A stretch of DNA of 64,000 nucleotides from Anthoceros angustus. Taxonomy: Eukaryota; Plantae; Anthocerotophyta. Position numbers and translations under genes: made by a program. The notes beneath the pieces were generated by a model. The model was not told the origin of the DNA. It saw only the letters and a program-made list of their open reading frames with translations, and did no database searches. The stretch covers positions 1,240,001-1,304,000 of the forward strand of contig MU008169.1 in the NCBI GenBank assembly GCA_010909165.1, written 5' to 3'. Shown here in pieces: positions 12,965-56,654 of this stretch (the first letter of the stretch is position 1; every line of letters starts with the position of its first letter).

Positions 12965-13382
12965 CTCGCAGCGCCCAGCTTCGGAGTCGTTTCCTGAGAC
13001 GACTCCACACTTCAGTTCACCGTCTTGTTGCCCATGCCATGCCAGCCGGCTGCCGTTATCCAATTGCTCCACGTCACCTTGATGCGATGCTGTGTTGCTT
13101 TGTTTTCGTGTTTCAGCTGAACAGTGTGAACAGGGAGACTACAGGAAGTGCCTCTGGCGTCGCTATACGTTTTGCCTACGTGGGGTGAGGTACGTACATG
13201 CGGCTAGGTACTGTAGAGTAGTTGGTGGCATTTGCACTTCGTTCTTCGTTCCTGTCTCCTGTTCCACGTACAGTACATGCGTACTGTTTGTGAGTGTGCA
13301 CAGTTGCAACCACGGTTGTGCCATGGTCGTCTCGTCGTAGACACGAGACGCATTGTATTCCACCCACTGGCTCCTAGGAGCC

Positions 13383-31168: not shown

Positions 31169-33154
31169 GTTGTACAACGTAAGTTTTGAAATTTAGTTGA
31201 TGTACGCACTCCCCCCTCCCCCCCCCTTCGGCCACTATGGTTAGAGAGTTGGAAAAATTAGGGGTGTGTAATTTTTTGGAAATATTATATGGATTATGTA
31301 GAGATGTGCGAAAGTTGCTTAAGGGATATTTCATACCTCCACTTTTCGATTGGAACATCTTGAAACAATGGTCCGATCTTCGTTTTGTTAATCCTCATGT
31401 CTATATTCTAGAGTTTGAGAGACTTTGTGTAAAAAACACATAATCCAACAAGTACAATCTTGATCAAAGGATTTGGGTCTAAAAAATGTCTGGCATGCAA
31501 TCCAACTACTATTGGATTTCCTATCCTTCATACAAGGTTTTGAAACTGCATAGAGAGATTAGTAGGCTCACATGACGAAACTAAGATTACTTTTTCCCTC
31601 TCCCTTTTAAACAATAAAGACTCACACCTAATCAAGAAATAGATAAAACAAATTGAAAGAAGATTCTATTAAGATAATATACCTACATGGAATCTGCTTG
31701 TATGCAACATATGTGGTAAGTGAGAGCATATGTGCTAAGTCAGAACGGTATTGCTATTAAATGCAAATCACTACGTTGATAATTTTTGAAGGACTATTGC
31801 AAGACAACATACCACACCACACGAGGGAGGGAAATTTCCCTCCCGCAAAAAAAATTAGGCATCTTTATTGATGATAGGATCTGCCCCGTAAGCGCACCCA
31901 TAAGGGCAAGATCCTTACATCAGATAGCCAGGACCAAGTGTTACCGTGGTCCAAATTGTGCAATCAATAATCACATACAAAAAGATCTTCAAGACAACTC
32001 ACTCCTGTTGTTCTTTGAATTACACGCTGTCACTCTCAGCCGAAAAGATTTTTGTAAAGAGTTAACACCACAAACATTACTCGTAATTAATTCCACTTGG
32101 GTAGAAGAATCTTCTTCAATGTTGAAAGAGAAATCACCTTCATAGATCCACCAATCTTCAGAACATTTTCTGCAATTATACAACTGAGATTACCATAATA
32201 ATTATATAAATTTTTCTAAAAAACATAACCATATATATAACTTATCCTCTAAGATTCGATCAATAAGAACATATTCGAGATACTATTACTTGAGAGAATG
32301 TTTAAAGCAAACTTGATGTTATAACAGTAAAAATATTTAAATAAAATCATTCCATCTTATTAACACCCATCAATTGAGGTTTTCTTAACTTTAATCTATC
32401 TTAGATATACAGTTTAAATAAATGATAAGAAGATCTTAAACTTGAAAATACTCATAAAATTCACCCTTGTGAACCTTGTCCAGTTTGCCGAATAGTGTGA
32501 GGAGTCGTAAACCAGATTAGATCGCTCGTGATATTAGGCACACGAAGTCATCTGCCTTGCTTACGAGAATCCCGCTCAAACATGTACATCCATCCAATTC
32601 GTCCAGGACTACAGCTGGAAAGCAGCTGAATGTCGAATCGAAGCGAAGGGGGAATGGACAGTTACATATAACGGCTGCAGGAGGGAGGGGCGTCTCTCTG
32701 CAGTAATGCGAGCCCGAAGTACCAAGACCCTTTTCACACAGCGCGAACCTGAATAGCTTTCCGCGAACCGGCACCTTCGCGGGATGCACAAGACCAGCGA
32801 CACCAGATTTGCAACCCTGAATTCTCCAGCAGTGCTTCATGGTTAAGCACAAGCACAAGATCCGGCGCCGGCGCCGAGGTCGGCAATCTGGCAAGTTACC
32901 GAAGCTCGGTGGCCTGAAGTTCCTTTGGCAGCCTTCCAAACACCATGTCGACGTCAGAGAAGGCCACTCACACGCGCGCGAGCACAAACACAAACACAAG
33001 CGTAGTCGTCGACGTCACGTGCACCACGCAACACCTCGCCACCGCCACGCCCTGAAGATGCGCAGAGGACTTAAACGCCGTATGTGCATCTTACCCGCCT
33101 CCGCCATGGCGTGCATGCATCATGCATGCATGCGCACGTCTCTCAAAGCCTAGG

Positions 33155-33378
33155 TATCCGTTGCAGTCTCTGCATCACCTACATATCCATCCAATCTTCG
33201 CTGTTTGTTGCTTGGACATGCTCTGAAGCCCTCAGTATCTGTTGCCATTTCCTCAGCACTTAGAAATCCACCCGATCTTCACTGTTCTGTTGCTTGGAAC
33301 TTCTCTGAAACCCTAGCATCTGTTGCCATCTGTTCATCACCAAGAAATCCACCCGATCTTCCCTGTTTGTTGCTTGGT
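33155..33378. repeat. ~80-bp tandem repeat, 3 diverged copies
   Basis: ATC(C/T)GTTGC...ATCCA(T/C)CC(A/G)ATCTTC.CTGTT..TGTTGCTTGG repeated three times. Confidence 0.8.
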
Positions 33379-34384
33379 GCGCAACCTTCCCTTCCCCAGT
33401 ATGCAACAGCCTTGGCCTTCATCCAATTGTGCGTGCTTTAGGTTAGACATCACCGCCCTTCCTTCTTCTAGCATGAAACCCTTGCACATGTGAACCACTC
33501 CATGAACAATCCACAATCAGTGGTGCACTCGCGCTAACAACCGGCCTTGCGAGATCTAATGCGATATCAAAGCTTATTCTTTGCACAGGCCGCCGCCGCC
33601 GACGACGACGACGGCTCCGCTGCCGCCGCTGCGGCCGACGCCGCTGCTGCCGCCCCTGCGGTAAGAAGAAAAAGAGGGGTCACATGCCAAGCATTCCCCG
33701 ACGGCCATTCCACGACGCGTTTGCTGCTATCGGAATGGGGAAATGTGGGTGCTGATGTTTCTCATCGAGTCCCCACGTTAAAACGTATGTAAACTCGAAC
33801 TCAGAACAAGTTAAGCGTTTTAAGAAAAATAAACTCAAACAAGCAAGCTTGATTGACAATCGTAATCTCCTAACAAAACAACCTAGTACGTTCAATGGAC
33901 CCTGCAGCCTGTAGGCAGGCACACACAGCCTGTGACGCAATGAATTGACAAGTGTCCTGTTCCCAAGCCTACACAGTCCTGCTAGCCTCCATGATCGGGG
34001 GCCCACTACAATTACACCAAGTCACTCATCCCTCTGAAGGGCAATGAATTCGGGCCACACCAGACGTCGTCTGTAGAACGTGACATGCCCGTCCCCAGCT
34101 TTCTTTGTGCTTCAGTACTGCTTCCCATAATGATACTGATGAACAGACCGAGATAATGGACAGGTTGATTGATGAGGAGCATTCACACCTTTGTACAGAA
34201 AGATCTGGCAAGTCTGTTGTTGGCCGACACTACAATTACACCAATGCAGTTTTCTACTAAACTCCACAACACTCAATTGATAGCTATCTGCTATTGCCAT
34301 CCACCATTCCTTTGTTTGCTCGAAGATTTCGGCAATGCATGATCTCCAAACCCAGGAAGACAGACAGGTTGGTTCCTACACCTA

Positions 34385-36063
34385 CTAAATGGTGGCAGAC
34401 GGAGATGTCAGCAACTCAAGGGATCTCCTCAGGTAAGACAGAGCTGTGGGAACATCATCAAATGCCAGGGCACTCACAGCATACCTTGAGGCCTTGTGAG
34501 CCTCTGCAACCTTTTCTGGTGGTGGCTGATAGGTGCCATCAGAATTTCCTTGCATTGCCGAGTAGGGGACTTCATCAAAGGGAGGTGCAGATGCAGCCCG
34601 CTCATGGTGTGGACGTTCGTAGTATCCACCACTGTAAGGCTGCGGGGGAGCAGATCCGAAGATGGGAGCATTGGGTGGGTGGAGATCATTTCTAGGGTGG
34701 AGATCCTGTCTAGGAGTGTAGGGGGGGGGTAATGGATCCGGGCTAGGGTGGTAAGAAGGATCCTGGGGTGGTGAAACAGGGAAGGGCATGTGTGCCGGAG
34801 GTGGTTGAGGCTGATCAAACGAAGGATACGGCACATGGAGATGGCTAGGATTGTGACCTTGACCTCCCACGGCATCTGATGGATGACGATTCGGATACCA
34901 TTGTGATTCACTCCCTGCTGCTCCTGCATCATGAGCTGCTGCTGCAGCTGGGGCATAACCAGTGCCTGGACTTGCTGCAGGAGACGTTGCATAACCTTGA
35001 CCAGAAGCAGGATACCCTGAATCTGGGCTCTCTTGGTGCAAGTGCTGCTGGAAATCGTGGGAGGCTTGAGGGCTTAAATATCGGTCACCAGAGGAGAGCC
35101 CTTGTTGAGGACTCACTTGTTGAGGACTTTGAGATTGATCCAAGTCTCCCCCTGGAGGACCTGGTGTCGGTTTCCGCCCCTCACTTACTGCCTTCCTGAT
35201 ATCGGCAGCCTTCCAAACCGAGTACTTGGCCTTCTGTTCAATCTGCAGCTCTCAGGCATGCAATCATTCAGCTCGACTGCCAACAAACCAGTCACGAAAG
35301 CACACAACCAATGACCACAGACAGTCTTGACTGCCCTACACAAACCAGCCATGGCCCCGCCAAGAACTTACATCAGGCTGGAGGTCACCAAACTGATGAA
35401 GCACATCAAAGAAGATACTGGCTGCATAGAACGTCTTCGCTGTATTCCTGAACACAACTCCAACCATGTAACAGTCTGCCACAAACACCTCATATCCAGC
35501 AAGCCCAAGCTTTTATCAAGGTTCACAGATTCACCAGAAATCCACTCTACACGGCGGTACCTACAAGTCAGCACGACCAGCTCTGTCTTGCTTGTCCGCC
35601 TTGGAGAAAACGCTAAGGGCAAATCCCTCCATGTACAGGTTGTCCTCGGGGCTCACTTTCACCACCTTCTTGTCCTGCACAACCGCCCGAATTACACCCA
35701 TATCCAATTCCCCTTTTCCAGCACACAAAACACCCACAACTCCCCCCGACCAATATCTCCTACCTTCTCCAGCTGGTTCATCAGAGACTCCAGCAACTTA
35801 TTAGTTGCCTTGGTTCGTTCTTTCACTGGAATCTTCAGCCCAAGCTCCATGGCATACAGCCGACCTGCCCAACACCATCACACGCATGCAAAGCGCAGGG
35901 AAAGATGAGACGAACCCAACGAAGACAAATCCCGGGCCGCAGAGACTGGATTCAACTCACAGTAGTAGGCCACCAGGAGATCATGCTTGTGAAGCTCATC
36001 CGCCCGCTGAAGGAAAGGAAGAAGCTGCTTTGCTGGCTCTGGCTTGGCTGGAGATGCCGACAT
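34385..36063 (-). CDS. LIP5: LIP5/VTA1 (SKD1/Vps4 activator, ESCRT); exons 36063-35961, 35864-35764, 35674-35565, 35447-35372, 35242-34385
   Basis: EPAKQLLPFLQRADELHKHDLLVAYYC|RLYAMELGL..|..FSKADKQDRAGRAD|LNTAKTFYAASIFF..|KYSVWKAADIRKA, Pro/Gln-rich linker, C-terminal VSL domain AEAHKASRYAVSALAFDDVPTA. Confidence 0.95.
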
Positions 36064-37193
36064 TTGCGCGCTGTGCTGGTCTCGTCAGATCAGATCAACA
36101 TCGAAGCAGCCAGTGCTGTGGTCCTGGCCCGTGACTTCTTCAGGACTCGTCTGGGGTTACATACACAGGTGTCGGGTGTTCATGTAATAACAGGAGGTAC
36201 TGTCCTGAGTTTACAAAAATGTACCTACGTATACTACGACAGCTTCTACATGTAACATGTCACCGGCGTTTTCTCTATAAGCGGGGTTTAATACTAAAGT
36301 CGTCATAAAGCCCCGTCAAGCGGCCGGTCTAGCGCTGCCTGACGCACTTCTCGAGATCACTGGGACGGGAGCGCTGCTGCTGCGGCGACCAGCGGACACG
36401 GCAATTTTGCCGGCATTTGTCCCGTGTGTTGAGATATGAAATCTGCTCGTCATGCCGGGGCCGGTGGATGGCGCGCCTCTTCGCCGCGCGAGGACCAGCG
36501 CCGACTTGTGTTCTGCAGGCTTGCGGATTGCGCAAAATTTTGGATCAGGAGCGTCCATTCTGTGCTCCACTTGTGCTCATCGCAGCATCCAAGCTGTGCA
36601 AGAAATGCGGGTCTTGAAAGCACAATTTGGTGCGCACGTTGAAGTACTGGAAGCTCGCAAGAGCAGTTCCGGTGCCTGCGCGCAGCCACAGGCTCGATCT
36701 TGGCCCGGTGCTGGCGCTACCATGCATGGACCCTGTCCCAGAGACAGGCCTGCTACCGCATTATGGCTATGACTGCCTCTCGATGTCTTGGACACAGTCG
36801 GGATCCGCAGGGATGATGACCTACGCAGTGGTGGATACGGGGGGCTAGATCCCCGAGCGCACTGCTGTGAGCAAGTCTTGTCATCGCAGGAGCTTCGAAT
36901 TCGATTCTTTTGAAATGGTGCCTTCCGTTCCTGATTTTTTTCTGCTGCTGACCGTGTGGTGTTGTTCTCCTTTGCGGGACGCGAAATTGAGTTTGCTAGA
37001 CTTTTGTGTGCTGTGCAGGAGCTCCGGAGAAGGGTACTTGCTGGCAGCACGAGTCTGAGCTATGTGATGTTGCTAGCGTTGGTCTTCTTGTCAGTGAGCA
37101 ATGGTTAGTAGTACTGTTGTCACCGCTTGCTGTGGCGGATTTTGTTTTGAGAGAGAGCGGTTTAGCTCAGATGTTGTGCGATGCATTTCATAG

Positions 37194-40100
37194 GCTCTCC
37201 TGTTGACGTGGATCTACGAGGTGAAGAACGCTTGGAGCACTCGCTTCAATTTGCCGATCCCTGGGCGTCGTACGCGGTTTACGTTCGGGACACAGGATCC
37301 GGAGCAAGTGTGACTATTTTTGCTGTAAACCTGACGGATGGCATGCCATTGTCCGGAGCGAAGCTGGTGGCTAGAGTGAGCCCGACGAATGTTACGTTTT
37401 CGGCACAGCCTAGTAGCTACACTCCCGGGGTTTATGTTATATCGGTGGATGTGAGCCTGTTTGGAGCTTACTCATTCAATATACTGAGCTGTGTCTCCGA
37501 TGATACTTGCAGTCCTATCAGTCGTGATGTGTATATGTTTAATGTCGGAGGAGCACTTGCTGCTTCCCACAGCTTTGCAAGTGGTTATTCTGATACATAC
37601 ACTGTAGGTGAGATAGCAAGCTTCAACATAACAGCTGAGGACTCACATGGGATTGTGGATACTGTAATCTATGATCCATGTCCATTTCAGGTCAACATCT
37701 CTTCGTATACGGATGGGGAGGATCCCCTTACCTATAAAATAATTCCACAAGGGCAAGGAATATATACTGTGCAGTTTGTGCCTATCAGAGTGCAATTGTA
37801 CTTCGTGTCCGTGACCATCTCTGGAACAGCAATATACGCAGGGGAGTTCTGGTTCAATACTACTATTGATGCTGCCACTGCTGTGAAGAAATTTGCTTTT
37901 GAAACTGATGCCTGGGACAATTCTAGCAGAGTGATTGTGGGGGAGCATCTCTATTCCCTAGTCAGTACAGATCCTGATTATGAAGTCATCAACAATTTTA
38001 CAATCCAAGTTGCCCCTTCGGGAGATTTACTCATGAATGCATCTGTCTTCACTTGCACAGATTTTCGGGTCACTGTGGGTTGTAGCTTTAGTATGAACAT
38101 CACAGTCCCAGGAAATTACTCTGTTTATGTCACTCTATTCGATGAGCCTTTGCCAAATTCACCTTTTACAGTGGAAGTTCTTCCTGGGATGGCTGTCGGT
38201 TTGAAATCAACACTTTCTGTGAAGTATGCTGGAATTACTGCCGGACAGTCGATAGCATATCAAGCATTCCTTGTAGACGAGTATGGAAATCCCGCTTCGA
38301 GCACCTTTAAAGGTGGCCCTGACTCACTTAATCTAATTGTGGGTCTCTACAGCTTATTGCCACCCATATTTGGAAATATTTCAGCCTTTCTTGACAACTT
38401 AGGCTATCCTGTACCTGGAAAGTACTTAGCCACGTTCAATGCAACTTTGGCGGGGAACTTTACAGTCTTTGCCTTCTTTGGTTCCTCTGTTCTTAACTCT
38501 CTTCGGGGTTCAGGGTTCACATTGGTTGTGAACCCCAGTGTGCCGTCTGCACATACTTCATTTTTGGACAACTTCAGTAACTTCACAGTGGGTAGCTCCA
38601 CACTGATGAAGGTCTACCTCAAAGATGCATACAATAATACTGTATCTAGGAACCTGCAGGTGGCAATCATTGTTTCTAAGGATCCGTCTAGTTTCACCTA
38701 TCCTGCTGTGTCCACAATTGGTGAACATTTTGAAGCTGTCGTCACCGGAATTTTCAAAGCTGACAACTACCAGGTAGTGAGGGCTTCTATCCCATTAATG
38801 TACTGTGGCCCATAATGCAGCTAAACGTTTCCAACCTATGATGTCATAAAGAACTGTTACATTGCTGAGCTCCGATCAGACCTTGGGCCTGAAAATGTTA
38901 GTAGTTGGTGTACGCACATGCTGGTCCCCAGTACATATGGCTGGCAATATGATTGCGAAGTCTGTTTGCAAAAATATTCTGTAAACAGTTCTGAATTTTG
39001 CAGGTGAATGTCTCTGTCAATGGATCCTCTCTCCTTGGCGGCTATCACCTACATGTGTTTGGAGGTCAAGCAGCCCCAAACAACTGCTCGTTTGTTGGCT
39101 TGCAAAACACTGAAGCTGGAATTAGCAGTTCTTTTGTGCTGCAACTGGCAGATGAATATGGCAATCCCCCTACAATAGATGCAGACATTCAGATTGAGAA
39201 CTACCTCAGGATCTTTTCCCCCCGGGGTGATGACTATGCAGACGTACGAGTGGCCCAATTTTCTGCTGGACTTTACAACGTAACGTATAGGGCCACAAAA
39301 GCACTGGTGTATGTGGTAAGCTTCTTTGTAGGCCATCAGCAACTAAGCAAAGAGATACTGGTTTCTCCGGGCCCTTTGGATGTGAAGCAGTGCTCCTTTT
39401 CAGGTCCTGGAACGATCGGAGGTTTTGTTAATAGAACTGTAAATATTACCATTTCTCCCAGGGATTCATATGGGAACAGACTGCATGTGAATGATGTCGA
39501 TAAGTTGATATTCCAAGTTTCAGGAACAGTGAGGCCTTTTGATGCGGGAATGCCTGAAGGGGGCCTTTGGATATCTCCTGTGTTTCTTGATCTAATTGGT
39601 GATGCATACATGTTTGGCTACAGTAGTCAGGTTTCTGGAAATGTTATTCTCACAGTAACCGCTGAGAACCATATTTATATCATTAAGAGTACTCAGAGAT
39701 CGGGGCGTCTAAGTGTACATAACACATATTTGTCAGGTATGGGTCTCAACGGCACTGCAACCAATAAATGGGCCATGTTCTACATACACGCATGTGATGC
39801 ATTTGGGAATCTGAAGAGTGATCCGGGAAGCATTGGAGAGCCTTTTCGGGCAGCAATATGTAGTGAAAATGGCGCGTGCAGCACTAGCAATATTTCTATT
39901 ACTGACCGCCACTACATGATGGGACAATATGTCATGAGCTATCAGGCACCTGTGAGTGGTAATTACACCATCTATATCTCTTGGCTTGGCACGGATATAA
40001 ATGGAAGTCCCTTGGTGGTGCCAGTTGTGGATGCATCTGTCAGCCGAATACTGGACCCCTTGCAGTTTGTTCTTTGTTCTGATCTCTCAACACCATATTT

Positions 40101-43100
40101 CTGCCCTGGACTGTTTGGTGCGTATGCCGGCCAAGAACAAAGTTTTACGCTTATGGCAGCAGACAACCAAGGCATTCCTCTGTTTTCTGGTGGAGCGCAT
40201 CTTTTACTTAGCATGTCACCTATCGCTGTTTCAAATAACACACTTGAGGACGTGGGGACTGGAGACTACGTGGTTCGCTATTGCATTTTCAAAGCTGGAA
40301 GTTATAATCTGACGGTCACCTATAACGGACTGGCTGTTGTTGACCGGCAGGTTCAAATTGCTCCAGGTGTCACATATGCGTCTAAGTGTACTCTGGTGGT
40401 ACCTTTTCCATTGTCATATCCAGTAGGATTGCTCTATGCTAGTGCTATCATCTCCCTGGACATGTATGCAAATCAGCAGGTATACGGGCCACAATATGCC
40501 TACTCTCTTGATCAGTTTGAAATTGTGGCCAACAAGAGTACTGGAGAGCAGGTACATGGCAATGTATCTGTTGCTGGAAACGGTTCAGTTGTTGTCTCCA
40601 TCATTTCCTATTTTGCTGGGACCTACAATGTTTCTGTGCTGTTGAATGGTGAACTTATCTCTGGGGCAAATCAGATTGTTCTCTTCCACCCAGGTGCTCC
40701 TATCATGAGCAACAGCCGCATTTCTTTCAACAATTGGACAGTAGCAGGTGACTTGGGCATTATATACATATTCCCCGTTGATGCGTTTGGCAATGAATTA
40801 ACTAGTGGTCTGAATTGTTCTGCAAGTGCTGCAAGTATTGGTGGTGGCTCATTTCCTCCACCATACTGTAACTCGTCTACTCACCCTGTGGAAGTGACTT
40901 ACAACTTGACCAAGACAGGGATCTACTACATCAGTTTTAACTTGTATGACTCAACTGGGGCTGGGTTTCGTTCTACAGCAAACATTACTGTCAAATCCGG
41001 ACAGCCAGCAGGACTAAACTGCAGGCCGGTTGATACTGTTTTTACAACGCAAACAGGAGCAACAAGCAATATGCTCATCGATTGCCAAGACTTGTGGGGA
41101 AATACCTGCACGGACGACTTTTCAGGGCTCTTCATGGTCTCATTGTGGATGAATGACTTTCCACCTGTCTATGCAAGTGTTTCGTTTGACGGTATCCATC
41201 TTGTTGCAACATATGCTCTTTACAAGTGTGGTAATTATACTAGTGAGGTTTGGTTTCAGGGTTTGAACATACCTGAGAGCTCCTGCATTGTCACTGCATC
41301 TCCAGCTCCTTCTTCAAGTACACTTTCATTTGCTCTTTATGGCCCAATTACCGCTGGTAAGCTCAACACGAGCTTGGAAGAAGCTAGAGTGTCTGCAGGA
41401 ACCATGGGACTTCTGAAGGTTGTCATTGTGGATATGTATGGTAATAGACAGGACATATCCGTTGCAGATACCATCAATGTCTCATTTGCACCTGTTCCTG
41501 GAGTTCCTCCTTACATCAGCACGGGTGCTTATGTGAAGCCAGTAAATATGAAGACTGATCGTAATTCAGATGGAACATGCAATGTAACATTTTCAGCAAA
41601 CATTGCGAACTTTCTCCATAAAGACTCCTTCTGGCCAATAAGGTATCTTCTGTCAGTGAGACTGCTAGGGGAAGACGGACTGTTACATGAAATTGCTGGG
41701 AGCCCTTTCAGATTCCTGGTCTCGCCAGGTTCGGTAAGTGTTGCAAAATCTATCCTTAAACAGACGGAGAGCTGGTCTGATGTCCACGGTTTGATGTGGA
41801 TGGTTACATTGATTCCAAAGGACATATTTGGCAATGCTGGCCCATTCGAGCCAACCTTGAGCATCACTGCACATCTTCAGGGCAATGATTATTTTCTGTC
41901 CAATGGATCCGCGGAAGGTTGGCTTGATTCTCCCAGTTATAATTATTTCCTTCAGATTGAGCAATTCTTCCAGGGCGCTGGTCTAACCATGAACTACTCC
42001 ACTCCCCCTTTAATAGTTGACAATTACAACGGTACTTTTTTCATCTACTTCAGTGTGCTAAAAAGCAGCTTCTACAATGTGTCCATTTTCATCAATGGTG
42101 CACTCGTGGGCGGTCCGTCGGTCACTATCACAAACTATCAAGTGATGCCGGGACCAGTGGACATGCGGCGGTTAAACCCAACAGGTTTGGGACTTGGGTA
42201 TAATGCAACAGTAGCTGGTCAGCTCAGTGCTATTCTGGTACAATTTGCTGACAAATTTGGCAACCCTGTAGACTTGGGCCAGGATGATGCAGCTCATCTA
42301 GTGGCCAATCTCACAGCGGACTTTCATGTCCATGTGTGGACTGGGGCGAGCTTCTTGGAGCTTCCAGATGAGGAGGTGGTCACTGGGAAAAATTTCTCGG
42401 TTGATGGAGAAGGGCTTGTATGGTTGTTCTACCAACCTCTGAGAAGTGGGCAGCTGATGCTAGATCTTGGTTACAGAGATTCCACCACGTCACTTGTGGA
42501 GAAGGTGTTTGGTAGTCCATTCTATGGGACCGTGGAACCAGGGACCATTCTTTCCAGCAATTGTGTAGCTTTCGGACCAGGCATGCGTTCTGCGTTGGCT
42601 TGCAACAACTATATGTGTCCTAATAGCTCCATTTTTCTTGAAGCTCGTGACAGCTACAACAACTTTGTGAGCTCTGATTTATCACCGAGTATATGTGAAA
42701 GCTTCACTGTAATCGCAGGCCCCAGCATGTCGTTTCGTAATGCAGTTCCTTTCAATGGGCGATGCCTGCTGACGTACACAGCTTCAAAAGTCTCGACTCA
42801 GATTATTGCAATTCAATATATGTGGAGCCCCATCCAGTCCAGTCCATTTCAGGTGGCTGTGCGTCCTACTGTTGGTGATCCAAGTCCCCGTAATTGTCTG
42901 GCTTCAGGAGATCTCGGAGGAATAATAACCGCAGGTGCAGCAGCTACTATCACAGTCAGGCTTGTTGATACAAATGGGGTGGAGATTTTTGAAAGCCCTT
43001 CTGGTACTGCAAATTATGTGAACCTGGTGATCGTCAACAGCACCATTGGAGTTGCGGCAGCTGATGTGATATCCAAGGACAACAACGATGGTACATTCAC

Positions 43101-46100
43101 GCTTAAGCTGGTAGCTTTCAGCTCTGGGTTGTATTCCTTCAACATTCTGGTGGGGCCAATGAAGATGCCCTTGGGAGGAAATGGCGATGGCTATGTACTG
43201 AGGGTTGTGTCTGGGCCAACAATTATTGCCAAAACAACTGCGTCTTTGGTAAGCAGCCATCCTTTGTACAGGACGGGCAAGGATGCTGTGGTGATTGAAG
43301 TGCAGCCACTGGACGGATTCGACAATTTTCAAGACAATGTCGTCAAACTTTCTGACTTCTTTGTGGCTCAAATCATTCAGCCAGATGGTATGTCCACCTT
43401 CGCTCCTCTGACACTGGATTCCACTGTCAGTGACAAAGAAGTTCCTTATCAGAAGTGGGTGCTCAGCTACATTCCGCTGCAATCACCGTTTGGAGGTAGT
43501 GTCTACAGTTTTGAGTTTTTCTGGAGTGATGGGTATCTGCTAGAGACCATCAACACGAAGATTTCTCTGCCCACATCTCCTGGTGAGCCGTTCTTAGATC
43601 ACACACAAGTAATTGGTCAGGGTGCAATAACTGCAGTCGCTGGATTGCAGGCTACATTTATTGTCCAGCTTTATGATGAGTATCAAAACCTTATTCGTTC
43701 AGAGTGGGATGTTCTGAATTCAAATGTGACAGTCGTCTTGAGCATAAGCAATGTTCCCATCCAGGTTAACTGCAGCTATCTGTACTCACCGACTGGTTTG
43801 ACTTGTAACTATACCGTGGCAGAAAGTGGCAACTACTCTCTTAAAGTGGCTTTTAACTCAACAGAGTATAAATCTTTTCCAAATGTTATAGTTGGCCCAG
43901 CACCGGTGTATCCCCCTTATTGTACTGCATCAGGTGATGGAGTTGGGGAAGGTGCTCCAATCTATGCGGGGGTACCAGTAAAGTTTGCAATACAACCATA
44001 TGACATGTTTGGCAACCGAATTTTCACAGGTGGAGATTCTTTTTCTGTGGTGCTGGACATGTACAATGACAGTGGCGACTCTTATCTGCAACCCCCGTCC
44101 GTGTATCCCAAGTGGACAGGAACTGAGTATGAAGTTTACTACACTCCGATGCTTGCTGGCTATGGAATTGTACATGTCAGGAGAGGGCTGGGAAGTATCC
44201 TCAACTCTCCTTTTCACATCCATGTGAACCCTGGGCCTGTAAGTGCAGAGCATTGTGTTGTACGACCTAGCTCGTTTAGCAGCTGTATGGCTGGAGACAT
44301 GCATAGCATCACACTGGTTTCGTTTGATAAGTATGGAAATATTCGACCCACAGTGACAGACTGGTTTGAGATTAGTAAACATGTAGAATATGCACCCAGT
44401 GAATCTGACATGGCAACAATGGGACCGCTTGGGAATGGGGTCTACCAATATGTTTATATGTGTCAGCATGCAGGCACTGTCTTGAATATGAACTGTACGA
44501 CTATCACTGTGCGCTTTGGTGAGTCAATTGTACTAAGCACCAAGCTTCGTGTGATACCTGGGCCTGCTGATATCTCAAAGTGCGCAGTCGTCTTGAAAGA
44601 ACGCATCCTTGTTGCTGGATCAGTTGGAAGTGTTGTTGTTGTGAGCAAAGATTCTTTTGACAATCAGCTTTGGGTTGGTGGCCTCGATTTTCTGGTCTTT
44701 GTGACTATCGATGATATAAATTCCACTGTCACACTTGTTGACAATGAAGACGGGACTTACTTGTTCATGTATGCAGCCAAGACGAGTGGCAACTACACAG
44801 TGCAGGCATCCTTTGGGGGACAAGTTTTTTTTCGTGACTATGTTCAAGTTTTCCCTGGGCCACCAGATTCATTCACTACTATTGTTACATTTGATTCTAG
44901 TGGATATGCATCAAATGAAGTGGGCAAGTTTCAGATTCAGATTTTTGACAAATTTTCGAATGCGATCATGGCAGATGTGTTGGATACCTCGCTGCTGTTA
45001 GTAACGCTAATGTCAAGCACCTTCCCATCATTTGCATGGTACCCTGAATCAAACATGTCGTTTACAGGGACTTCGTACGAAGTACGATTTTTATCTCAGC
45101 ATCCTGGTGTTATTCGCCTCTCATTGAACATCTCAAATGAAATGTTGTTGAACTTCAGTAGCTCAGCACCATATTCAGTTGTGGTAGGCCCTGGTCTTCC
45201 TTTTGTCCCTAATTTTGCCTTGTTTGGACCCGGGATTGATGCTGGCGGGATTGTGAATTGGCCAGCCACCTTCTACGTCCACATGAGGGATTCAGATGGA
45301 AATCTAATCACGAATCATCCGCATGGAAGTTGGAGCCTGAGCTTCAGCCCCATAAATGTTGTTCCTGTTCGCCCAGCCCCCTTTTTCTTGCTAGACGGAA
45401 CTGTTATGTTCACATACATTCCTGTGAGGCCAGCGGTTGATCTGGCAATCACAGTTCTTTATCGTGGGCAGAAAGTGGGATCCGTGAGGTATGTCAAAGT
45501 CAAGGCTCGACCTGGATTTTGGTCACTGAAGAATTGTGCAGCTTTGGACTCGTATGGAGTTCCAATTCACACTTCCAAAGCTGTCACAGCTGCAGTTGGC
45601 ATGAACTTGACAATCAATTTGCAGGTCAGAGATAAGGATGGTATGGATATACCTGCGCCTGACCCAACCCTTCTCACGTTTCAGGCAACAGTTTCAGGAG
45701 TTCCAATATCTGTGGCCCCCACCAGCAGTGGGCTTTATGGTTTTACAATCACAGATACCGTAAGCAAGAGATATGTTATTGAAGTCACTGATGGGGTGCA
45801 GTTTATTCAAAACAGTGGATTTGTTGTGAATCTGTTGCCTGGCCCATCACACCCCCTGAACACGCAGATTCTCACCTCTGATGGGCTACATGCATTTGAT
45901 CCCAGTACTGCTCTTGTGGCTGGTGAGGAGACAATACTTCTGTTACAAGCATGTGACGGCTATGGTAACAAACAAGTTTTCAATATCTTAAATTCTCCTG
46001 ACATCTTTTCAGCGGCTTTGCAATTGCTTCCCAGCAAGGCTCTCTTTAATTCCTACATTTCACTGTATGATATTGGTGTGGTGACGGAGCTCCATATCTA

Positions 46101-49100
46101 CCCTTACTTGTCAGGTGATTATTTGTTGAGTATCACCGTGAATGGAGCCTTTGTCCGGACCCTTTCTCTCCACGTTAAGGCTGGTGCTTTTGACTTTCCA
46201 TGTTTTGAAATCTTCCCATCAAAGTTGCCTATTTTTTACGCTGGTGTGGAAAGTGGATTTGAGCTTATTCCAAAGGACTCGTACTTGAATACATTTGACG
46301 GAGCAGCTGGTTGGGGCGACATCTGTGTTGAGCTGCAGCCAACTGATGGGAGCACCTCTATTCGAGCATCAATTTCACCCCAGGTGAATAGCACGGCCAT
46401 ACTAGTGTCTTTCACGCTTACTCTGGTGGGCTCATACTCCATTGTGGCATCAAATGCCACCTCGAAGATTACAGGAAACCTCCAGAAGTCAGATTGGGCA
46501 AGGTTGGAGACGATCACAGTATTGGCGGGTCCCATTGAACCGTCTTCGTTGGTGACTGCTTTACCGTTAGTTAGTAATACAGCTGGTAAGATGGTCATGC
46601 TGCACTACACGGCCTTTGACGGTTTTGGTAATGTGAATTACAGTAGTCCACAGATAATGACAAGCCCGCCATATTGGGTAGAGGTGACGTCTGCGTGTTC
46701 CTGGGACGCTGCTGGCCAGCAGTCATGTGGTCTTCATTCCTTCTCGACGTCTTTCCTGCCTACCATGCCGGGAACGGTAAACATGTCGCTGATGTGGGGA
46801 GAACTGGTGTTTCAAACCACTGTGGATATCTTACCAGCTTCGTCACCTCAACTTTTGTCAGCCAAGTTAGCAGATAGTTTAGCACACATAATTGTTTTGT
46901 TCGACAGTGACACGGATGGGGGTTCCCAAAATAGGACATTCAGTTCAACAGGATGCAGCAGATTGTTTAACAGTTCTCTGCTGCTAAAGCTAGGGACAAA
47001 TCCATCTTGCACATTCCAAGACCCAAGGACATTGCTGATTTTCGTGGGGCATAATGCCTCAATCTTGCCAGCAGATTCTGAGTCGCCTGATTTTATTGGA
47101 CTCTTGGATAACTCCGTCTCTGGTGCTGGGGCCAATTCCTTTCCTGTGACAGGTTCTGTGGTGCTCATGCCACCTGATGCACCTATAGCGCCCAAGGCAA
47201 GACTGGTGGCACCGACTTCAATAAGTCCTTGTGATACCCTTGTGTTGGATGCGTCAGATTCATCCGGCTCTGGTGGGCGACCCTTGATATTTAAGTACTC
47301 TGTAGAAGGAACAGGAGATCAAGACGTTCTTGTTGCTATTGCTCAATGGCTCAATGAGGTGCCGTCATCAAAGATGACTGCTGTTCTGAGTGCAAACATG
47401 CTACAAGCTGGCCAGAAATACACTTTTTTTGTGACAGTTATGAATTTTATCGGAGTGCACAGCAGGAGCTCAATCACAGTACGCACGATGCATGTGCCTG
47501 TTCCACTGCTAACCATTCCTGTGGCTGATGGCATCCTTTATGGTACTCGTGGCCAGCTTTTTGAAATTGAGGCAGTGGCTTCTCTTCCTTCCTTGGCAAT
47601 CCTAGCATCTAACGGTAGCTGTAGTCCAGCATTACCTTCAGCTCAGAAGCCTTCTCTTCTATATGAGTGGTCACAGTCTGGCGGACCCATCCTGGATTTC
47701 TCTTCAATCATATGGAAAGCACGAGTTCTAAGTGTTCGGGGTGAGTTGTTGGAAGCTGGGTATATGTACAACTTTACTGTGAGATGTTCGATGCAAGGGT
47801 TCCCGATGTCTTTTTCAGAGGCGGCTGTTGCTCTGGCAGCTGAATCTTCTTCTTTATCAGTCGCGATAATTGGTGGCAACCGCACGGTAGACTCGTCTCA
47901 AAACGCCACGCTGGAAGTAGATGCGCATGATGCAGATTATTCTGTTGATCTTAACGGCCAAAGTTTGCAGTTTAGATATGCTTGGACTTGTGATCCAGAC
48001 CTGGGCGTAAATGCGTCCCCTCTGTATGAGTCATCTACTTCGAATGGATTTGGTAGGAAAATTACAATTCCTGGTGGATACCTTGCGGATGGGACGTACA
48101 ATTTTTCTGTAAGCGTTGATAAAGAACCTTTAGTATCAGGTCGTATTGGAGTGACAGCGTGGGTTCTTGTGACTGCGGGATCACACCTGTCAACCGTCAC
48201 TGCGGTGATTGAGAATGCTGCTGTTGTTGCCCAGGGTATTGAATGTTCAAAGCAGCTGAAGGTGTCATGCTCAGATGGTCTGTATCACTATAAGTGGTCA
48301 ATCTGGTCTGCCGTGGATCAGAGGGACTTGGTGAGTTCTCAGTCTGTGTTTGCTGTGTCCCACCATCTGCTGATTCCAGCGAATACTCTTTTAGGAGGAG
48401 CCTCTTATATGATTTCCTGCAATGCATCTAATAAGTTTGGTCACCCGGGAAGTGCGAACATAACGATAGACACTCTTCGTGATCCTACCGGTGGCACTGT
48501 CATTTTAAGTGCAAATTCAGAATCTGACATTGCTGGCCAGACACTGTACAGCCTCATTGCTTATGATTGGACCCCAGGCCAAGGCATAGGAGCGCTCAAG
48601 TACGAGTTCAGATATTTTCTTGAAGGAGGAATGGAGACAGTCGTACAGCCCCTTTCACTCACTAACTTTGTGGAAAATGTCGCAGTGAAAGCAGGGAATG
48701 TGACATTTAGAGTTTACATTGCAAACCCCACAGCAGGTTGGATATCAGCAGGTGATGCTCCACAGGGAGCTTTGTATGAGCTTCCACCCATCACCGTCTC
48801 TGCTTATGGAGAGTCAACGTTTTCTTCCTTGGAGGATGAGAATGCTTTATATAACAGCTTCCAAACTCTTCAAGGGCAAGGGGAATACTTCCAGGCCCTC
48901 AATGTGATGGAAGTTTTTGGCTCATTGTACATATTCAAGGGTGCAGAATGCTTTGCTGATAGTTCCGTAGTTCCGTTGGTAAATGATATGCTGATGATGA
49001 TTGCTGCCTCCGATTCGCTGTATCCGTCCCCCTATGTGAGTGACACAACGACAGCTGGGACTGGTCCCAGCATTGCTATTGCACTTGCATGTGCTCTGGG

Positions 49101-49923
49101 GGAGATATTCAAAGCACCTGGCAATGTAGGTGCACAGGGCTTGAATACATCCTTCAGCATTTTTGAAGACAAGCTCACGGTAGTGGCTGCTCACCATCTA
49201 AGTGCAGCTGCAGCATCTGGACAGCCCTACAATCCCTGTTTCTTTGATGCGGTGGACGGACTCCTCTCCGCTGTTCATTCCAGCTGTACACCGACACCAG
49301 AGAGCCTTGCACGGCGAGCATCTCGAATGCCCCTCTCCCTGGCTCACATTCTCTTGAATGACAATGCTGTCAACTTGCCAAGCTATGTATTCCGCCCTTC
49401 TTTTTCGCTGGTTGCTGCCAGTGTGGATCTGGGAGCAAGCTTCACCAACAATCTGACCGCCTCTGTTGCCAATTTCCAACTTGATATCTCCATTTCGTCT
49501 GGGACGGGCACTGCGGGGGCCGCTATTGCTTGCTTCTCCATGCTTGCTCCCCTGAACGTCTTGCAGTGGACAACAACGGATTGGTTTGATGCCCTGGTGG
49601 CCGTCCATCAGGTCTGCGATTTTACAATATCTGGTATCCTTGATAATGCTGTTACCGCAGTTGTTTCGTTTGTCGATCTCCTTCCACCTGTAAAGAACAC
49701 CACATATGCAATTGCTGGAATTAGTGGAGAAGATGGCAGCAGTCCCACTATTTTTTACGGTACTGGATATGAAGATGGACAGATATCCGTGCATGTACCC
49801 AGCAATGCAACTTCGTCACGTGTCTTGCTTGTTCAGATTGTTAGCGGCAGCCCAGGGCATAGGGCTGGGATCCAAGGTTACAGCTTCCTCTTGGTTGCGG
49901 CGGCAGCATTTTGGTTTCTGTAG
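37194..49923 (+). CDS. Giant (>4,160 aa) extracellular protein: ~26 filamin/Ig-like repeats + PKD/REJ-like module + hydrophobic C-terminus; exons 37194-38773 and 39004-49923, 5' exon(s) unresolved
   Basis: 544-aa and 3641-aa ORFs join in frame through a GT-AG phase-0 intron 38774-39003 (YQ|VNVSVNG); repeated D-x-(Y/F)-G-N / G.Y.V.Y / GSPF...V.PG motifs; PQLLSAKL..FDSDTD and ISPCDTLVLDASDSSGSGGRPLIFKY, YEWSQ, YAWTC typical of REJ-region proteins; many N-x-S/T sequons. Confidence 0.88.
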
Positions 49924-51386
49924 GTAATTAATTATCGGAACGCGCGAAGTTTGGGAAGAAGCTGGAAATAGATGGTGAAAATGTCTTTAGCTATGAAGTC
50001 TGAATAGGGAGAAGCAAATTAGCGCCTATACAAGTGGCCAAGTTGTATAGGTGTTATATAATAAAGAAGTGAGAATGCGTTGAATAAGAGGATTTATTAT
50101 ATTACTTTTATTCGTCATCCCAAACAGATGTCTCACATGCTCCAAAGCCCCCACATATTGGAAGGAGCACAATTTCCAGCAAACTGGAGCAAAAATCCTC
50201 CACGAACTCGGTCAGTCCTCTATTCCCATTGAATTGCCTGGTCATGGTCTAGGCGAGGTTTCAGTGACGAACGTAGGAATTCCACACACGAAACTTTTGA
50301 CCGGCCACTCCAGTGAGGATTGGGTGGTGCCCTTTTGACGAGGGATCAGAAGCTTCCGACCCGTTGTCTGTCTTTCTCAAGTTTTTCGATAGGAACCATA
50401 GGAGGCGGATTTTAACTACAGCTAATCAGTGGGCTTCTGAAAGTGATTGGGGTACTCGCAGTTTCGAACATGTGTCTATGATTGGTTGAAGTCAAAGCTT
50501 AGGTAGCTGTATCTGCATCTACATGGCAATAATACTGAGGCTTCCAAGTAAGCGGCTTTATTAGACACGAAATATTTTTCATGGTTGCGATGAATCTGAC
50601 GTTTTGTCCGACGTTCAGCAGTCATTGCCAAAGGCCATGAATCTTGGGCGCCGGCATGCCGGGCCCTAGGTGTGTCACTTACGGCGTGTTTAGGGTCTTC
50701 ACACCCTCGGTTGTTGTGCACAACGACATCGACCGTGTCTGGATTGGATGTATAGTGCGAATATAGAAATAGCCGTATGCATTCCCTTCGATGTTGCTAC
50801 AGAGATGGTCGCCCATGTTCATTTACTATTGTTTAATGAATGGCACGCACTAACGACATGGGCATCATTTCCATTGAAAACAATGGTCTACCTGTAGGTC
50901 GAACCCTTCATCTACCACTATGGGCCGCTAAAAGACATAAAATTCTCTACGACACCCTAATTGTGTGCCCTCTTTTGCAGGGTATGCTCAAATACGCATT
51001 TCAATGCCCATCGAAAACCCCGTTTCGCGTATATTCACGTCAAAAGCCGCTTGATGTATATTCAGCCGCTTCAAATATTATGCTGTTATAAGTCCTTCTT
51101 CACTTGTGTTAAAAGCTCCTAGCTACTCACAAAGATAAAATTATCGTCAACATATAAAGCAATGATACATAATCCATTTGTTGTGTGCAGGACATAGACA
51201 CTACAATCAGCTGCAATAGGGACAAAACCGAGGGCTCGAAGCTTTTTGTCTACTCGCCCGTTCCATATACATGCTGATTGTTTCACCCAAGTAGGGATTT
51301 AAGCAGCTCACATACCAGTTCGGGATCCAGGATATAGCCTTCTAGCTGCATCATGAAGATGGTCTCATCAAGGGGGTTACTTGTAA

Positions 51387-56232: not shown

Positions 56233-56654
56233 TGAGGAGAAGAAACGGAGGAGGAGGAGACGCGAAGGCGGGATCGGCGCGAAGCAAGAAATGCGAGAGC
56301 GGGCAGGCGCCGTGCCTGCGTAATTGCGCATGCCACTGGCAGGAGGAAAATCTCGGGTAAATTACATCGGCCGGCAGCCCAATTTGAGCTTGCCGGGATC
56401 GGATGCGGTGTGCGGGAGGAGCAGGATCGGGGGGGCCTGCTGCGGCCGAGGCGAGGTGGTGCGGGTGCGGGGGAATTTGCATGGAGAGCAGATGATGCGA
56501 GTGGCGGGGAAGGGGCGGAGGTGGCCGCGCGAAGGGGCGGGGAAAGGGAGAGTGATCGGTGCATGGCTTCTTTCTAGGCCGGGGCTGCGGCGGGTGCGGG
56601 AGGGAGGGAGGGTTGGCAAATTGCGGGGGCCGGGGCCGGGGTGAGGCGGATCCG

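What the first reader, a model, noticed from the sequence alone, without database searches (positions are those of the whole stretch)
37194..49923. Giant filamin/Ig-repeat + REJ cell-surface protein: candidate gamete-recognition or adhesion system in a seed-free plant
Seen: >4,160 aa, ~26 diverged ~100-120-aa beta-rich repeats with D-x-(Y/F)-G-N signatures, then a PKD/REJ-like region (from ~46845), a helical segment and a short hydrophobic tail; fully open and rich in N-glycosylation sequons. Established: filamin-repeat ectodomains occur in angiosperm GEX2 (sperm-egg attachment), and REJ modules in polycystin-1/PKDREJ and sea-urchin sperm receptors for egg jelly. Inference: a very long tether combining both modules, plausibly on flagellated sperm or egg, or at a symbiont interface. 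I know of no characterised land-plant protein with this architecture.
Basis: partly seen in the sequence, partly recalled or inferred. Interest (0 to 1): 0.85.

Follow-up and report, generated by a model that had tools for sequence, protein, structure and literature searches.

The report
Giant plant filamin–REJ–GAIN surface protein
This is a real gene in a land-plant genome for a roughly 4,170-residue cell-surface glycoprotein: a long rod of about 27 filamin-type Ig domains ending in the REJ-plus-GAIN module known from animal sperm egg-jelly receptors and polycystin-1, but its proposed role in gamete recognition is untested.

Summary
The gene is not one open frame. It has two exons, 37181-38773 and 39004-49923, split by a GT-AG intron, and possibly a 27-nt signal-peptide exon upstream. 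It encodes about 4,170 aa.

- **Ig array:** 27-28 diverged filamin/GEX2-type Ig repeats (Pfam Filamin E 5e-73).
- **REJ module:** Pfam REJ E 8e-19.
- **GAIN domain (new here):** the "helical segment" is the first half of a complete GAIN fold (BAI3 Z 16.2; Foldseek E 1e-7; best Atlas shape match "sperm receptor for egg jelly-like"). It lacks the GPS cleavage motif.
- **Anchor:** the protein ends in a 14-residue hydrophobic tail that looks like a GPI signal. There is no other membrane segment and no cytoplasmic tail.
- **Glycosylation:** N-glycosylation sequons are 2.3-fold enriched.

Relatives with filamin + REJ (+ GPS) + TM occur in Marchantia, Mesostigma, Mesotaenium, prasinophytes, a cryptophyte and Trimastix. 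Two unnamed contigs carry collinear copies. An earlier scan note (s1-643511, unchecked) reports a tandem pair elsewhere in this genome.

So this is a land-plant member of an old, uncharacterised family, best read as a long adhesion tether.

The parts
37067..37093 (+). Putative first coding exon: ATG plus 8 hydrophobic codons (M-L-L-A-L-V-F-L-S), the start of a signal peptide. Unverified.
   Evidence: Read from the sequence. A GTGAGC donor follows at 37094, and the acceptor AG at 37164-37165 is in phase with the main frame. No read evidence was available.
37094..37165 (+). Putative 72-nt intron 1 (GT..AG). Unverified.
   Evidence: Sequence inspection. This is the only donor/acceptor pair that keeps the frame. 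The alternative is a start at ATG 37181 with no signal peptide.
37181..38773 (+). Exon A, 531 codons counted from ATG 37181 (the frame is open from 37166). It holds Ig repeats 1-5, and the fifth is cut by the intron.
38774..39003 (+). Intron of 230 nt, GT..AG, which shifts the frame between the two ORFs.
   Evidence: Exon A is exactly 531 codons, and exon B starts in the frame of the 38998 ORF.
39004..49923 (+). Exon B, 3,639 codons plus a TAG stop.
37262..46794 (+). Array of 27-28 filamin/GEX2-type Ig repeats with a period of about 105-110 aa, interrupted by the intron.
   Evidence: Pfam Filamin and Ig_GEX2_N; self-HMM; pairwise identity median 18%; collinear with L001 and L002.
46819..48810 (+). 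REJ module, about 660 aa of beta-rich domains. The Pfam REJ core lies at nt 47731-48618.
   Evidence: Pfam REJ E 8e-19; 850 REJ-family hits across the library.
48829..49362 (+). GAIN subdomain A: seven helices.
   Evidence: AF2 model ma944f84a4eaf, mean pLDDT 77; GAIN matches by Foldseek, VIA-align and the Atlas; hhalign to the pre-GPS region of GPS-bearing relatives.
49381..49842 (+). GAIN subdomain B: a beta-sandwich without the C-x-C-x-H-L-T GPS motif. The last two strands are QISVHV and SSRVLLVQIV.
   Evidence: No Pfam GPS hit and no regex hit.
49843..49878 (+). Small-residue stretch (S-G-S) and a polar spacer of about 10 residues: a candidate GPI omega-site region.
   Evidence: Sequence inspection. 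No GPI predictor was available.
49879..49920 (+). Terminal 14-residue hydrophobic tail, followed directly by the stop codon.
   Evidence: Mean Kyte-Doolittle hydropathy 2.0, and no other hydrophobic 19-mer in the protein. It is modelled as a helix.
50060..50065 (+). AATAAA, a possible polyadenylation signal about 140 nt after the stop.
   Evidence: Sequence. Not verified.

Best explanation
This is an intact gene for a secreted, heavily N-glycosylated protein held on the outer face of the plasma membrane by its extreme C-terminus, most likely through a GPI anchor. Next to the membrane sits a REJ module and an uncleavable GAIN domain. This is the same pair that forms the membrane-proximal ectodomain of sea-urchin sperm REJ receptors and polycystin-1. 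From it projects a rod of 27-28 filamin/GEX2-type Ig domains. At the usual ~4 nm per Ig domain, the rod would be on the order of 100 nm long.

The protein has no 7TM or 11TM part, no PLAT domain, no GPS site and no cytoplasmic tail. It therefore cannot signal on its own. It most likely works as a long adhesion or recognition tether whose Ig array binds a partner on another cell or matrix. Any signal would have to pass through a partner protein in the same membrane.

It belongs to an old filamin-REJ-GAIN family shared with green algae and other flagellated protists. The single most likely site of action is the surface of the motile sperm or the gametes, about 0.35 overall, but that step is inference.

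Shown: the gene structure, the domains, the GAIN fold, the sequon excess and the family distribution. Inferred: the signal peptide, the GPI anchoring, adhesion as the function, and the cell type.
For: - **Gene model:**; open frame P about 1e-83.
- **Ig and REJ domains:** Filamin, Ig_GEX2_N and REJ all score above Pfam cut-offs. There are 27 repeats.
- **Extracellular location:** 83 sequons against 36 +/- 5 expected, and no internal hydrophobic segment.
- **GAIN fold:** the AF2 model has pLDDT 77 and pTM 0.77. The nine best Foldseek PDB hits are all GAIN domains, E 1.4e-7 to 1e-3. VIA-align gives BAI3 Z 16.2 over 261 residues and CELSR1 Z 16.1, covering both subdomains. All Atlas rows are GPS/GAIN proteins; the best by query is 'sperm receptor for egg jelly-like', TM 0.68 over 315 residues.
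- **No GPS:**
- **Family:** 850 hits. The best is Marchantia paleacea at 33% identity, E 3e-140, followed by Cymbomonas, Symbiochloris, Trimastix, Mesostigma and Mesotaenium. These relatives carry Filamin + REJ, some with GPS, and a TM near the C-terminus.
- **Conservation:** collinear copies at 30-49% identity on contigs L001 and L002.
- **Context from papers:** REJ proteins on male gametes in sea urchin and Ectocarpus (PMC4700764) and REJ-like proteins in Cryptosporidium (10.64898/2026.10.13.757955); the FUS1/GEX2 Ig-domain gamete adhesins (PMC13601591).
Against:
- The signal peptide depends on an unverified 27-nt exon. Starting from ATG 37181 there is none.
- The GPI signal was judged by eye only.
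- Pfam itself finds no GAIN or GPS in the last 340 residues, so the GAIN call rests on a predicted model built from a 21-row alignment. An earlier model from 12 rows failed for the beta part.
- Several algal relatives end in a true TM plus a cytoplasmic tail, which this protein lacks.
- Presence or absence in seed plants was not tested, so the link to motile sperm is unsupported here.
Confidence: 0.6

Rival explanations
1. It is a passive glycocalyx or mucin-like coat protein. On this reading the Ig rod with its N-glycans forms a protective layer that regulates adhesion on a flagellar or cell surface, as FMG1B does on Chlamydomonas cilia, rather than binding a specific partner.
For: It is a giant chain of Ig-like repeats with low sequence identity between repeats and a strong N-sequon excess, anchored only at the C-terminus. 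FMG1B has 34 Ig-like repeats, is N-glycosylated and acts as an adhesion regulator (PMC12021028).
Against: FMG1B has a cysteine-rich domain, a disordered linker and a multi-helix TM domain, and no REJ or GAIN is reported for it. Repeat-by-repeat collinearity at 30-49% identity with L001 and L002 suggests that each repeat is individually constrained, which fits specific binding better than bulk coating. Homology to FMG1 was not tested.
Confidence: 0.2
2. It is the ligand- or force-sensing subunit of a polycystin-like complex. The REJ-GAIN ectodomain would pair in the same membrane with a channel or receptor, as polycystin-1 does with PKD2, and gate ion flux on contact or flow.
For: The REJ + GAIN pair defines the PKD1/suREJ family. 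Many library relatives continue into a GPS motif and several TM segments.
Against: This protein has no GPS motif, no PLAT domain, no TM bundle and no cytoplasmic tail. No partner channel gene lies nearby; the flanking genes are Vta1 and Pur-alpha. Whether this genome has a PKD2-like channel was not tested.
Confidence: 0.1
3. It is a surface protein used at an interface with microbes, either a symbiont cavity or in defence, rather than in reproduction.
For: Only the general point that long Ig-repeat adhesins (Pfam also gives Invasin_D3 and Big_1 matches in relatives) are used in host-microbe contact.
Against: The family occurs in free-living unicellular algae and protists. There is no evidence of any kind for this reading from this window.
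Confidence: 0.05
4. It is a decaying or mis-modelled locus and not a working gene.
For: The 5' end is unverified, and exon A begins with what looks like the last strand of an Ig repeat.
Against: There are 3,639 + 531 stop-free codons (P about 1e-83), a clean in-phase intron, and all domains are intact and collinear with relatives. No further Ig-coding sequence lies upstream.
Confidence: 0.02

Closest known systems
[quoted passage not shown]
   Same: A REJ module is followed by a GAIN-type domain and then a single membrane anchor at the extreme C-terminus, with a large glycosylated ectodomain. The best shape match in the Atlas is a cluster named 'sperm receptor for egg jelly-like'.
   Different: The N-terminal binding part here is 27-28 filamin Ig domains instead of EGF and C-type lectin modules (the suREJ1 architecture is from my own knowledge and PMC4700764). 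There is no GPS motif. The anchor looks like a GPI signal. Sperm expression is unknown.
Polycystin-1 (PKD1) / PKDREJ
   Same: The REJ domain scores above the Pfam cut-off, and a GAIN fold follows directly after it.
   Different: No GPS cleavage motif, no PLAT domain, no 11-TM region and no channel-like domain. The repeats are filamin-type Ig domains, not PKD domains.
GEX2 (angiosperm sperm) / FUS1 (Chlamydomonas plus gamete) adhesion proteins
   Same: Ectodomains are built from filamin-like Ig domains, and Pfam Ig_GEX2_N matches at 87 bits. GEX2/FUS1 are gamete attachment proteins (PMC13601591).
   Different: FUS1 has seven Ig-like domains, and the family has no REJ or GAIN module (and my own knowledge). 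Here there are about 27 repeats plus REJ-GAIN. The Ig_GEX2_N match lies on an ordinary repeat of the array (residues 1655-1741), so it does not show orthology.
Adhesion GPCR GAIN domains (BAI2/3, CELSR1, latrophilins, GPR110)
   Same: The two-subdomain fold is shared: a helical subdomain A plus a beta-sandwich subdomain B placed directly before the membrane anchor.
   Different: No 7TM domain follows, there is no GPS motif and hence no expected autoproteolysis or tethered agonist, and sequence identity is only about 10-12%.
Uncharacterised algal and protist filamin-REJ proteins (for example Cymbomonas KAK3265849/KAK3281997, Symbiochloris KAK9787018, Mesostigma, Mesotaenium; Marchantia paleacea KAG6557914)
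   Same: These are true homologues, with E values from 1e-140 to 1e-33 over the REJ-GAIN part, and the same filamin + REJ order.
   Different: Several of the algal ones end in a proline-rich linker, a full TM helix and a cytoplasmic tail. This protein stops at a 14-residue hydrophobic tail. None of them has a known function.
Chlamydomonas FMG1B ciliary glycocalyx protein
   Same: A giant, N-glycosylated, C-terminally anchored chain of more than 30 Ig-like repeats that share little sequence with each other.
   Different: It has a different C-terminal organisation, with a Cys-rich domain, a disordered linker and a multi-helix TM domain, and no REJ or GAIN is reported. Homology was not tested.

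Membership tests
Filamin/ABP280 repeat (PF00630) | Profile match above the gathering score, repeated in tandem | tested here: met
   E 9e-15 for exon A and 5.1e-73 for exon B against a cut-off of 26.9 bits. A self-HMM finds 27 repeats.
REJ domain (PF02010) | Profile match above the gathering score | tested here: met
   68 bits against a cut-off of 25, E 8e-19, residues 2910-3205 of exon B.
GAIN domain | Two-subdomain fold (helical A plus beta-sandwich B) directly before the membrane anchor | tested here: met
   In the AF2 model, the top Foldseek hits are all GAIN domains, E 1.4e-7 to 1e-3. VIA-align gives Z 16.2, 16.1 and 14.1, and the Atlas rows agree. This rests on a predicted model only.
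GAIN domain | Sequence-profile match (Pfam GAIN or GPS) | tested here: not met
   No Pfam family at E <= 1 in the last 340 residues. hhalign to the pre-GPS region of GPS-bearing relatives gives 98% probability with the REJ end included but only 52% (E 1.4e-4) without it.
Polycystin-1 / PKD1 family | GPS autoproteolysis motif C-x-C-x-H-L-T | tested here: not met
   No regex match and no Pfam GPS hit. The equivalent turn reads H-V-P-S-N-A-T with no cysteines.
Polycystin-1 / PKD1 family | PLAT domain and a multi-pass (11-TM) membrane region | tested here: not met
   Pfam lists only Filamin, Ig_GEX2_N and REJ. There is no hydrophobic 19-mer apart from the terminal tail.
GEX2/FUS1 gamete adhesins | Ig_GEX2_N / filamin-like Ig ectodomain | tested here: met
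   Ig_GEX2_N scores 86.8 bits against a cut-off of 27, but the match lies on a generic repeat of the array.
GEX2/FUS1 gamete adhesins | Overall architecture: a few (about 7) Ig domains, one TM, a cytoplasmic tail, no other modules | tested here: not met
   About 27 repeats plus REJ and GAIN, and no cytoplasmic tail. FUS1 description from PMC13601591.
GEX2/FUS1 gamete adhesins | Gamete-specific expression and an attachment phenotype | not testable with these tools
GPI-anchored surface proteins | C-terminal signal: small omega-site residues, a polar spacer of about 8-12 residues, and a terminal hydrophobic stretch with nothing after it | tested here: inconclusive
   S-G-S, then a 9-10-residue spacer, then a 14-residue hydrophobic end. 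The pattern fits by eye, but no predictor or biochemistry was available.
GPI-anchored surface proteins | N-terminal signal peptide | tested here: inconclusive
   Present only if the unverified 27-nt exon at 37067-37093 is used. The sequon excess argues for secretory routing.

The most novel reading that the evidence does not exclude
The protein is a sperm (or egg) surface receptor of a plant with swimming sperm, and is homologous in its REJ-GAIN core to the animal sperm receptors for egg jelly. That would mean a REJ/GAIN gamete-recognition module is conserved from protists to animals and early land plants. It would also imply that the module was lost when seed plants gave up motile sperm and kept only the short GEX2-type Ig adhesin.
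Probability: 0.25. Interest if true: 0.85.

Novelty: new variant of a known kind. Interest (0 to 1): 0.55.

Why it matters
REJ and GAIN domains are textbook features of animal sperm receptors, polycystins and adhesion GPCRs. I found no paper describing either in a land plant.

This locus shows a complete REJ-GAIN module fused to the Ig-domain type used by the plant and algal gamete adhesins GEX2/FUS1. Collinear relatives exist on other land-plant-like contigs and in streptophyte algae.

If expression proves to be gametangial, it gives plant reproduction research a concrete candidate for sperm-egg recognition in plants with swimming sperm. It would also give a testable case of deep conservation of the REJ gamete module. 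If expression is vegetative, it is still the first plant GAIN-domain surface protein, and a natural example of a GAIN domain without cleavage site, 7TM region or cytoplasmic tail.

Tried and rejected
- **Word-indexed homologue search:** the REJ-GAIN part as a region of exon B gave nothing. The same part as a stand-alone 1,040-aa query gave only two weak metagenomic REJ hits. The tool is too insensitive at 25-35% identity, so these blanks mean little.
- **PDB sequence search** of the last 1,040 aa: nothing.
- **ESM Atlas search by features** of the last 340 aa: no usable hit.
- **First AF2 model** (12-row alignment, 440 aa): the beta half came out below pLDDT 50, and Foldseek gave only generic helical repeats, with BAI2/3 at E 0.05-0.1. 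It was superseded by the 21-row model.
- **Iterative HMM** of the last 440 aa over the hit set collapsed onto the REJ end only.
- **Upstream exons:** a search for Ig-coding sequence in 33000-37262 found none.
- **Alternative donor at 37104** for the first intron: rejected because no in-phase acceptor exists.
- **Downstream splice that removes the stop:** rejected because the TAG lies in frame before the only good GT.
- **Organism identification from the PPR gene:** the best hits are Diphasiastrum at 45-50%, and no close species is in the collection, so the lineage is left open.
- **Literature:** nothing found on filamin+REJ or GAIN in plants.
- **Left out by instruction:** the joined two-exon protein was not built or searched.
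Full report
**Gene model**

The ORF listing shows two long forward ORFs in different frames, 37181-38815 (544 aa) and 38998-49923 (3,641 aa). The sequence between them holds a canonical intron. The donor reads CCAG|GTAGTG with GT at 38774-38775, and the acceptor reads TTTTGCAG|GTG with AG at 39002-39003. Exon A from ATG 37181 to 38773 is exactly 531 codons, and exon B from 39004 is in the frame of the second ORF. The finding is therefore one gene of at least 4,170 codons, not a single open frame.

A stop-free run of 3,639 codons at this base composition has a chance of about 1e-83.

The 5' end is not settled. Exon A from its ATG has no signal peptide. A short upstream ATG exon (37067-37093, nine mostly hydrophobic codons) followed by a GTGAGC donor and an in-phase acceptor at 37165/37166 would supply one. 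No Ig-coding sequence lies further upstream.

The upstream neighbour is a divergently transcribed Vta1 gene and the downstream neighbour a Pur-alpha gene. At the 3' end, TAG follows the hydrophobic tail directly, and an AATAAA lies about 140 nt downstream.

**Domains**

- **Pfam matches.** Filamin scores 9e-15 and 5.1e-73, Ig_GEX2_N 1.3e-24, and REJ 8e-19 (68 bits against a cut-off of 25).
- **Ig repeats.** An HMM built from the protein's own repeats converges on 27 repeats from residue 28 of exon A to residue 2487 of exon B, plus a weak 28th. The repeats are old: median pairwise identity is 18% and the maximum 30%. Twelve carry the exact D-x-[YF]-G-N signature.
- **Extracellular features.** N-X-S/T sequons number 83 against 35.8 +/- 5.4 in shuffles. 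No internal stretch is hydrophobic enough for a membrane helix, and only the last 14 residues are.

**The C-terminal part**

Pfam sees nothing in the last 340 residues.

A first AF2 model with 12 aligned sequences resolved only a helical bundle. After adding more relatives (alignment A3, 21 rows), the model reached mean pLDDT 77 and pTM 0.77. It shows seven helices followed by a beta-sandwich and a terminal helix. Three structure searches agree on what this fold is:

| Search | Result |
|---|---|
| Foldseek vs PDB | The nine best hits, E 1.4e-7 to 1e-3, are all adhesion-GPCR GAIN domains (BAI2, BAI3, CELSR1, latrophilin-1/3, CD97, GPR110) |
| VIA-align vs 48,161 chains | Five GAIN structures rank first (Z 16.2, 16.1, 14.1, 12.6, 12.5; 232-265 residues aligned across both subdomains), above the helical-bundle background (Z 11.9) |
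| ESM Atlas by shape | Every row is a GPS/GAIN protein; the best by query is a cluster named 'sperm receptor for egg jelly-like' (TM 0.68, 315 residues) |

Profile-profile comparison with the pre-GPS region of GPS-bearing relatives gives 98% probability when the REJ end is included. Without it the result is 52% (E 1.4e-4) over the helical part.

It lacks the C-x-C-x-H-L-T GPS motif. The last two strands are separated by a loop with no cysteines and with proline after the H-V pair, so autoproteolysis is not expected.

After the last strand come S-G-S, a polar spacer of about ten residues, 14 hydrophobic residues and the stop codon. This is the layout of a GPI attachment signal, though I could judge it only by eye.

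**Relatives**

The exhaustive representative search with the last 1,040 residues found 850 proteins at E <= 1e-3 and 19 at E <= 1e-30. Named ones include:

- Marchantia paleacea KAG6557914 (33% identity, E 3e-140);
- two giant Cymbomonas proteins (5,498 aa, and a 6,625-aa representative whose NCBI-named cluster member is 6,723 aa);
- Symbiochloris, Mesostigma, Mesotaenium, Pterosperma, Tetraselmis and Trimastix;
- a cluster that includes a Rhodomonas sequence.

Their Pfam content is again Filamin + Ig_GEX2_N + REJ, and some also have GPS. Across the best hits there are two classes:

1. REJ, then a canonical GPS, then one or several TM segments (polycystin-like).
2. REJ, then a GPS-less module, then one TM near the C-terminus.

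The closest kin of this protein belong to the second class. Several of those (the Cymbomonas, Symbiochloris, Mesostigma and Mesotaenium proteins and the unnamed Logan protein P0041) have a proline-rich linker, a full TM helix and a cytoplasmic tail, all of which this protein lacks.

Two unnamed contigs carry collinear copies. L001 (a Logan assembly) matches exon-B residues 392-3464 at 32-49% identity. L002 (a metagenome contig) matches residues 1535-3545 at about 30%. The repeat order is therefore conserved repeat by repeat.

An earlier first-stage note (s1-643511) reports a tandem pair of similar genes elsewhere in this genome. I could not read that DNA.

The host is a land plant, to judge from its PPR gene. 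The best hits are only 45-50% identical (Diphasiastrum, then ferns, a conifer and a liverwort), so the lineage is open and the genome is not in the protein collections.

**What it most likely does**

The shown facts describe an extracellular, glycosylated protein anchored at its C-terminus. A REJ-GAIN base sits next to the membrane, and a rod of about 27 Ig domains projects from it. It has no signalling part of its own.

The simplest mechanism is a long adhesion or recognition tether. The cell type is not shown. Several lines of analogy point to gametes:

- REJ proteins act on male gametes in sea urchins and are male-gamete-specific in Ectocarpus (PMC4700764).
- REJ-like proteins sit at the male gamete apex in Cryptosporidium (bioRxiv 10.64898/2026.10.13.757955).
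- Filamin-type Ig ectodomains mediate gamete attachment in FUS1/GEX2 (PMC13601591).

This makes a sperm or gamete surface role the most likely single option, about 0.35, but it rests on analogy alone.

A passive glycocalyx role like that of Chlamydomonas FMG1B (PMC12021028) and a polycystin-like sensor complex are live rivals.

**Comparison and novelty**

The protein meets the Filamin and REJ profile tests and the GAIN fold test. It fails the GPS, PLAT and multi-TM tests for the polycystin-1 family, and it fails the architecture test for GEX2/FUS1. I file it as a land-plant member of an uncharacterised filamin-REJ-GAIN family. It works most like the single-anchor sea-urchin REJ receptors but has a different binding part and anchor.

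I found no paper describing REJ or GAIN in land plants. This reflects the searched library only.

**Limits**

- The signal peptide exon, the GPI anchoring, the function and the cell type are all inferences.
- The GAIN call rests on a predicted structure.

Noticed in passing
window 34385-36063 (- strand): The upstream neighbour is a divergently oriented multi-exon Vta1/LIP5-like gene (Pfam Vta1_C E 4e-13; Vta1 N-terminal pieces at 25-26 bits, just under the cut-off). Its first ATG lies about 1 kb from the putative start of the giant gene, so the two may share a promoter region.
   Followed up: partly
window 56559-57814 (+ strand): Two ORF pieces match Pfam PurA (Pur-alpha ssDNA/RNA-binding protein; E 5e-10 and 1e-4). 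This is probably one spliced gene downstream of the giant gene.
   Followed up: partly
window 13353-17120 (+ strand): A long single-exon PLS-type PPR gene. The best database hits are only 45-50% identical (Diphasiastrum complanatum, then Cryptomeria, Adiantum and Calypogeia), which shows that this genome and its close relatives are not in the protein collection.
   Followed up: partly
window 38774-39003: The intron cuts through the fifth Ig repeat. The self-HMM match in exon A stops at model position 38 of 77 at the exon end, so the repeat is completed only after splicing. I did not test this on a joined sequence, by instruction.
   Followed up: no
L001:1-11481 (Logan SRR33208241 contig) and L002:1281-11962 (metagenome contig ERZ12294360 scaffold_294_c2): Both contigs carry collinear homologues of the giant gene, broken by several introns. 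L002's last exon ends in a Lys/Pro-rich stretch instead of a hydrophobic tail, and the CDF motif in GAIN subdomain B is conserved. The source organisms are unknown.
   Followed up: partly
P0010, P0017, P0154 (library proteins; P0010's cluster includes a Rhodomonas salina sequence): Marine protist proteins of 2,500-7,000 aa combine 7-8 or more filamin repeats, Invasin_D3, REJ, a canonical GPS and several TM segments. The filamin-REJ-GPS combination therefore seems widespread and, as far as I could find, undescribed.
   Followed up: partly
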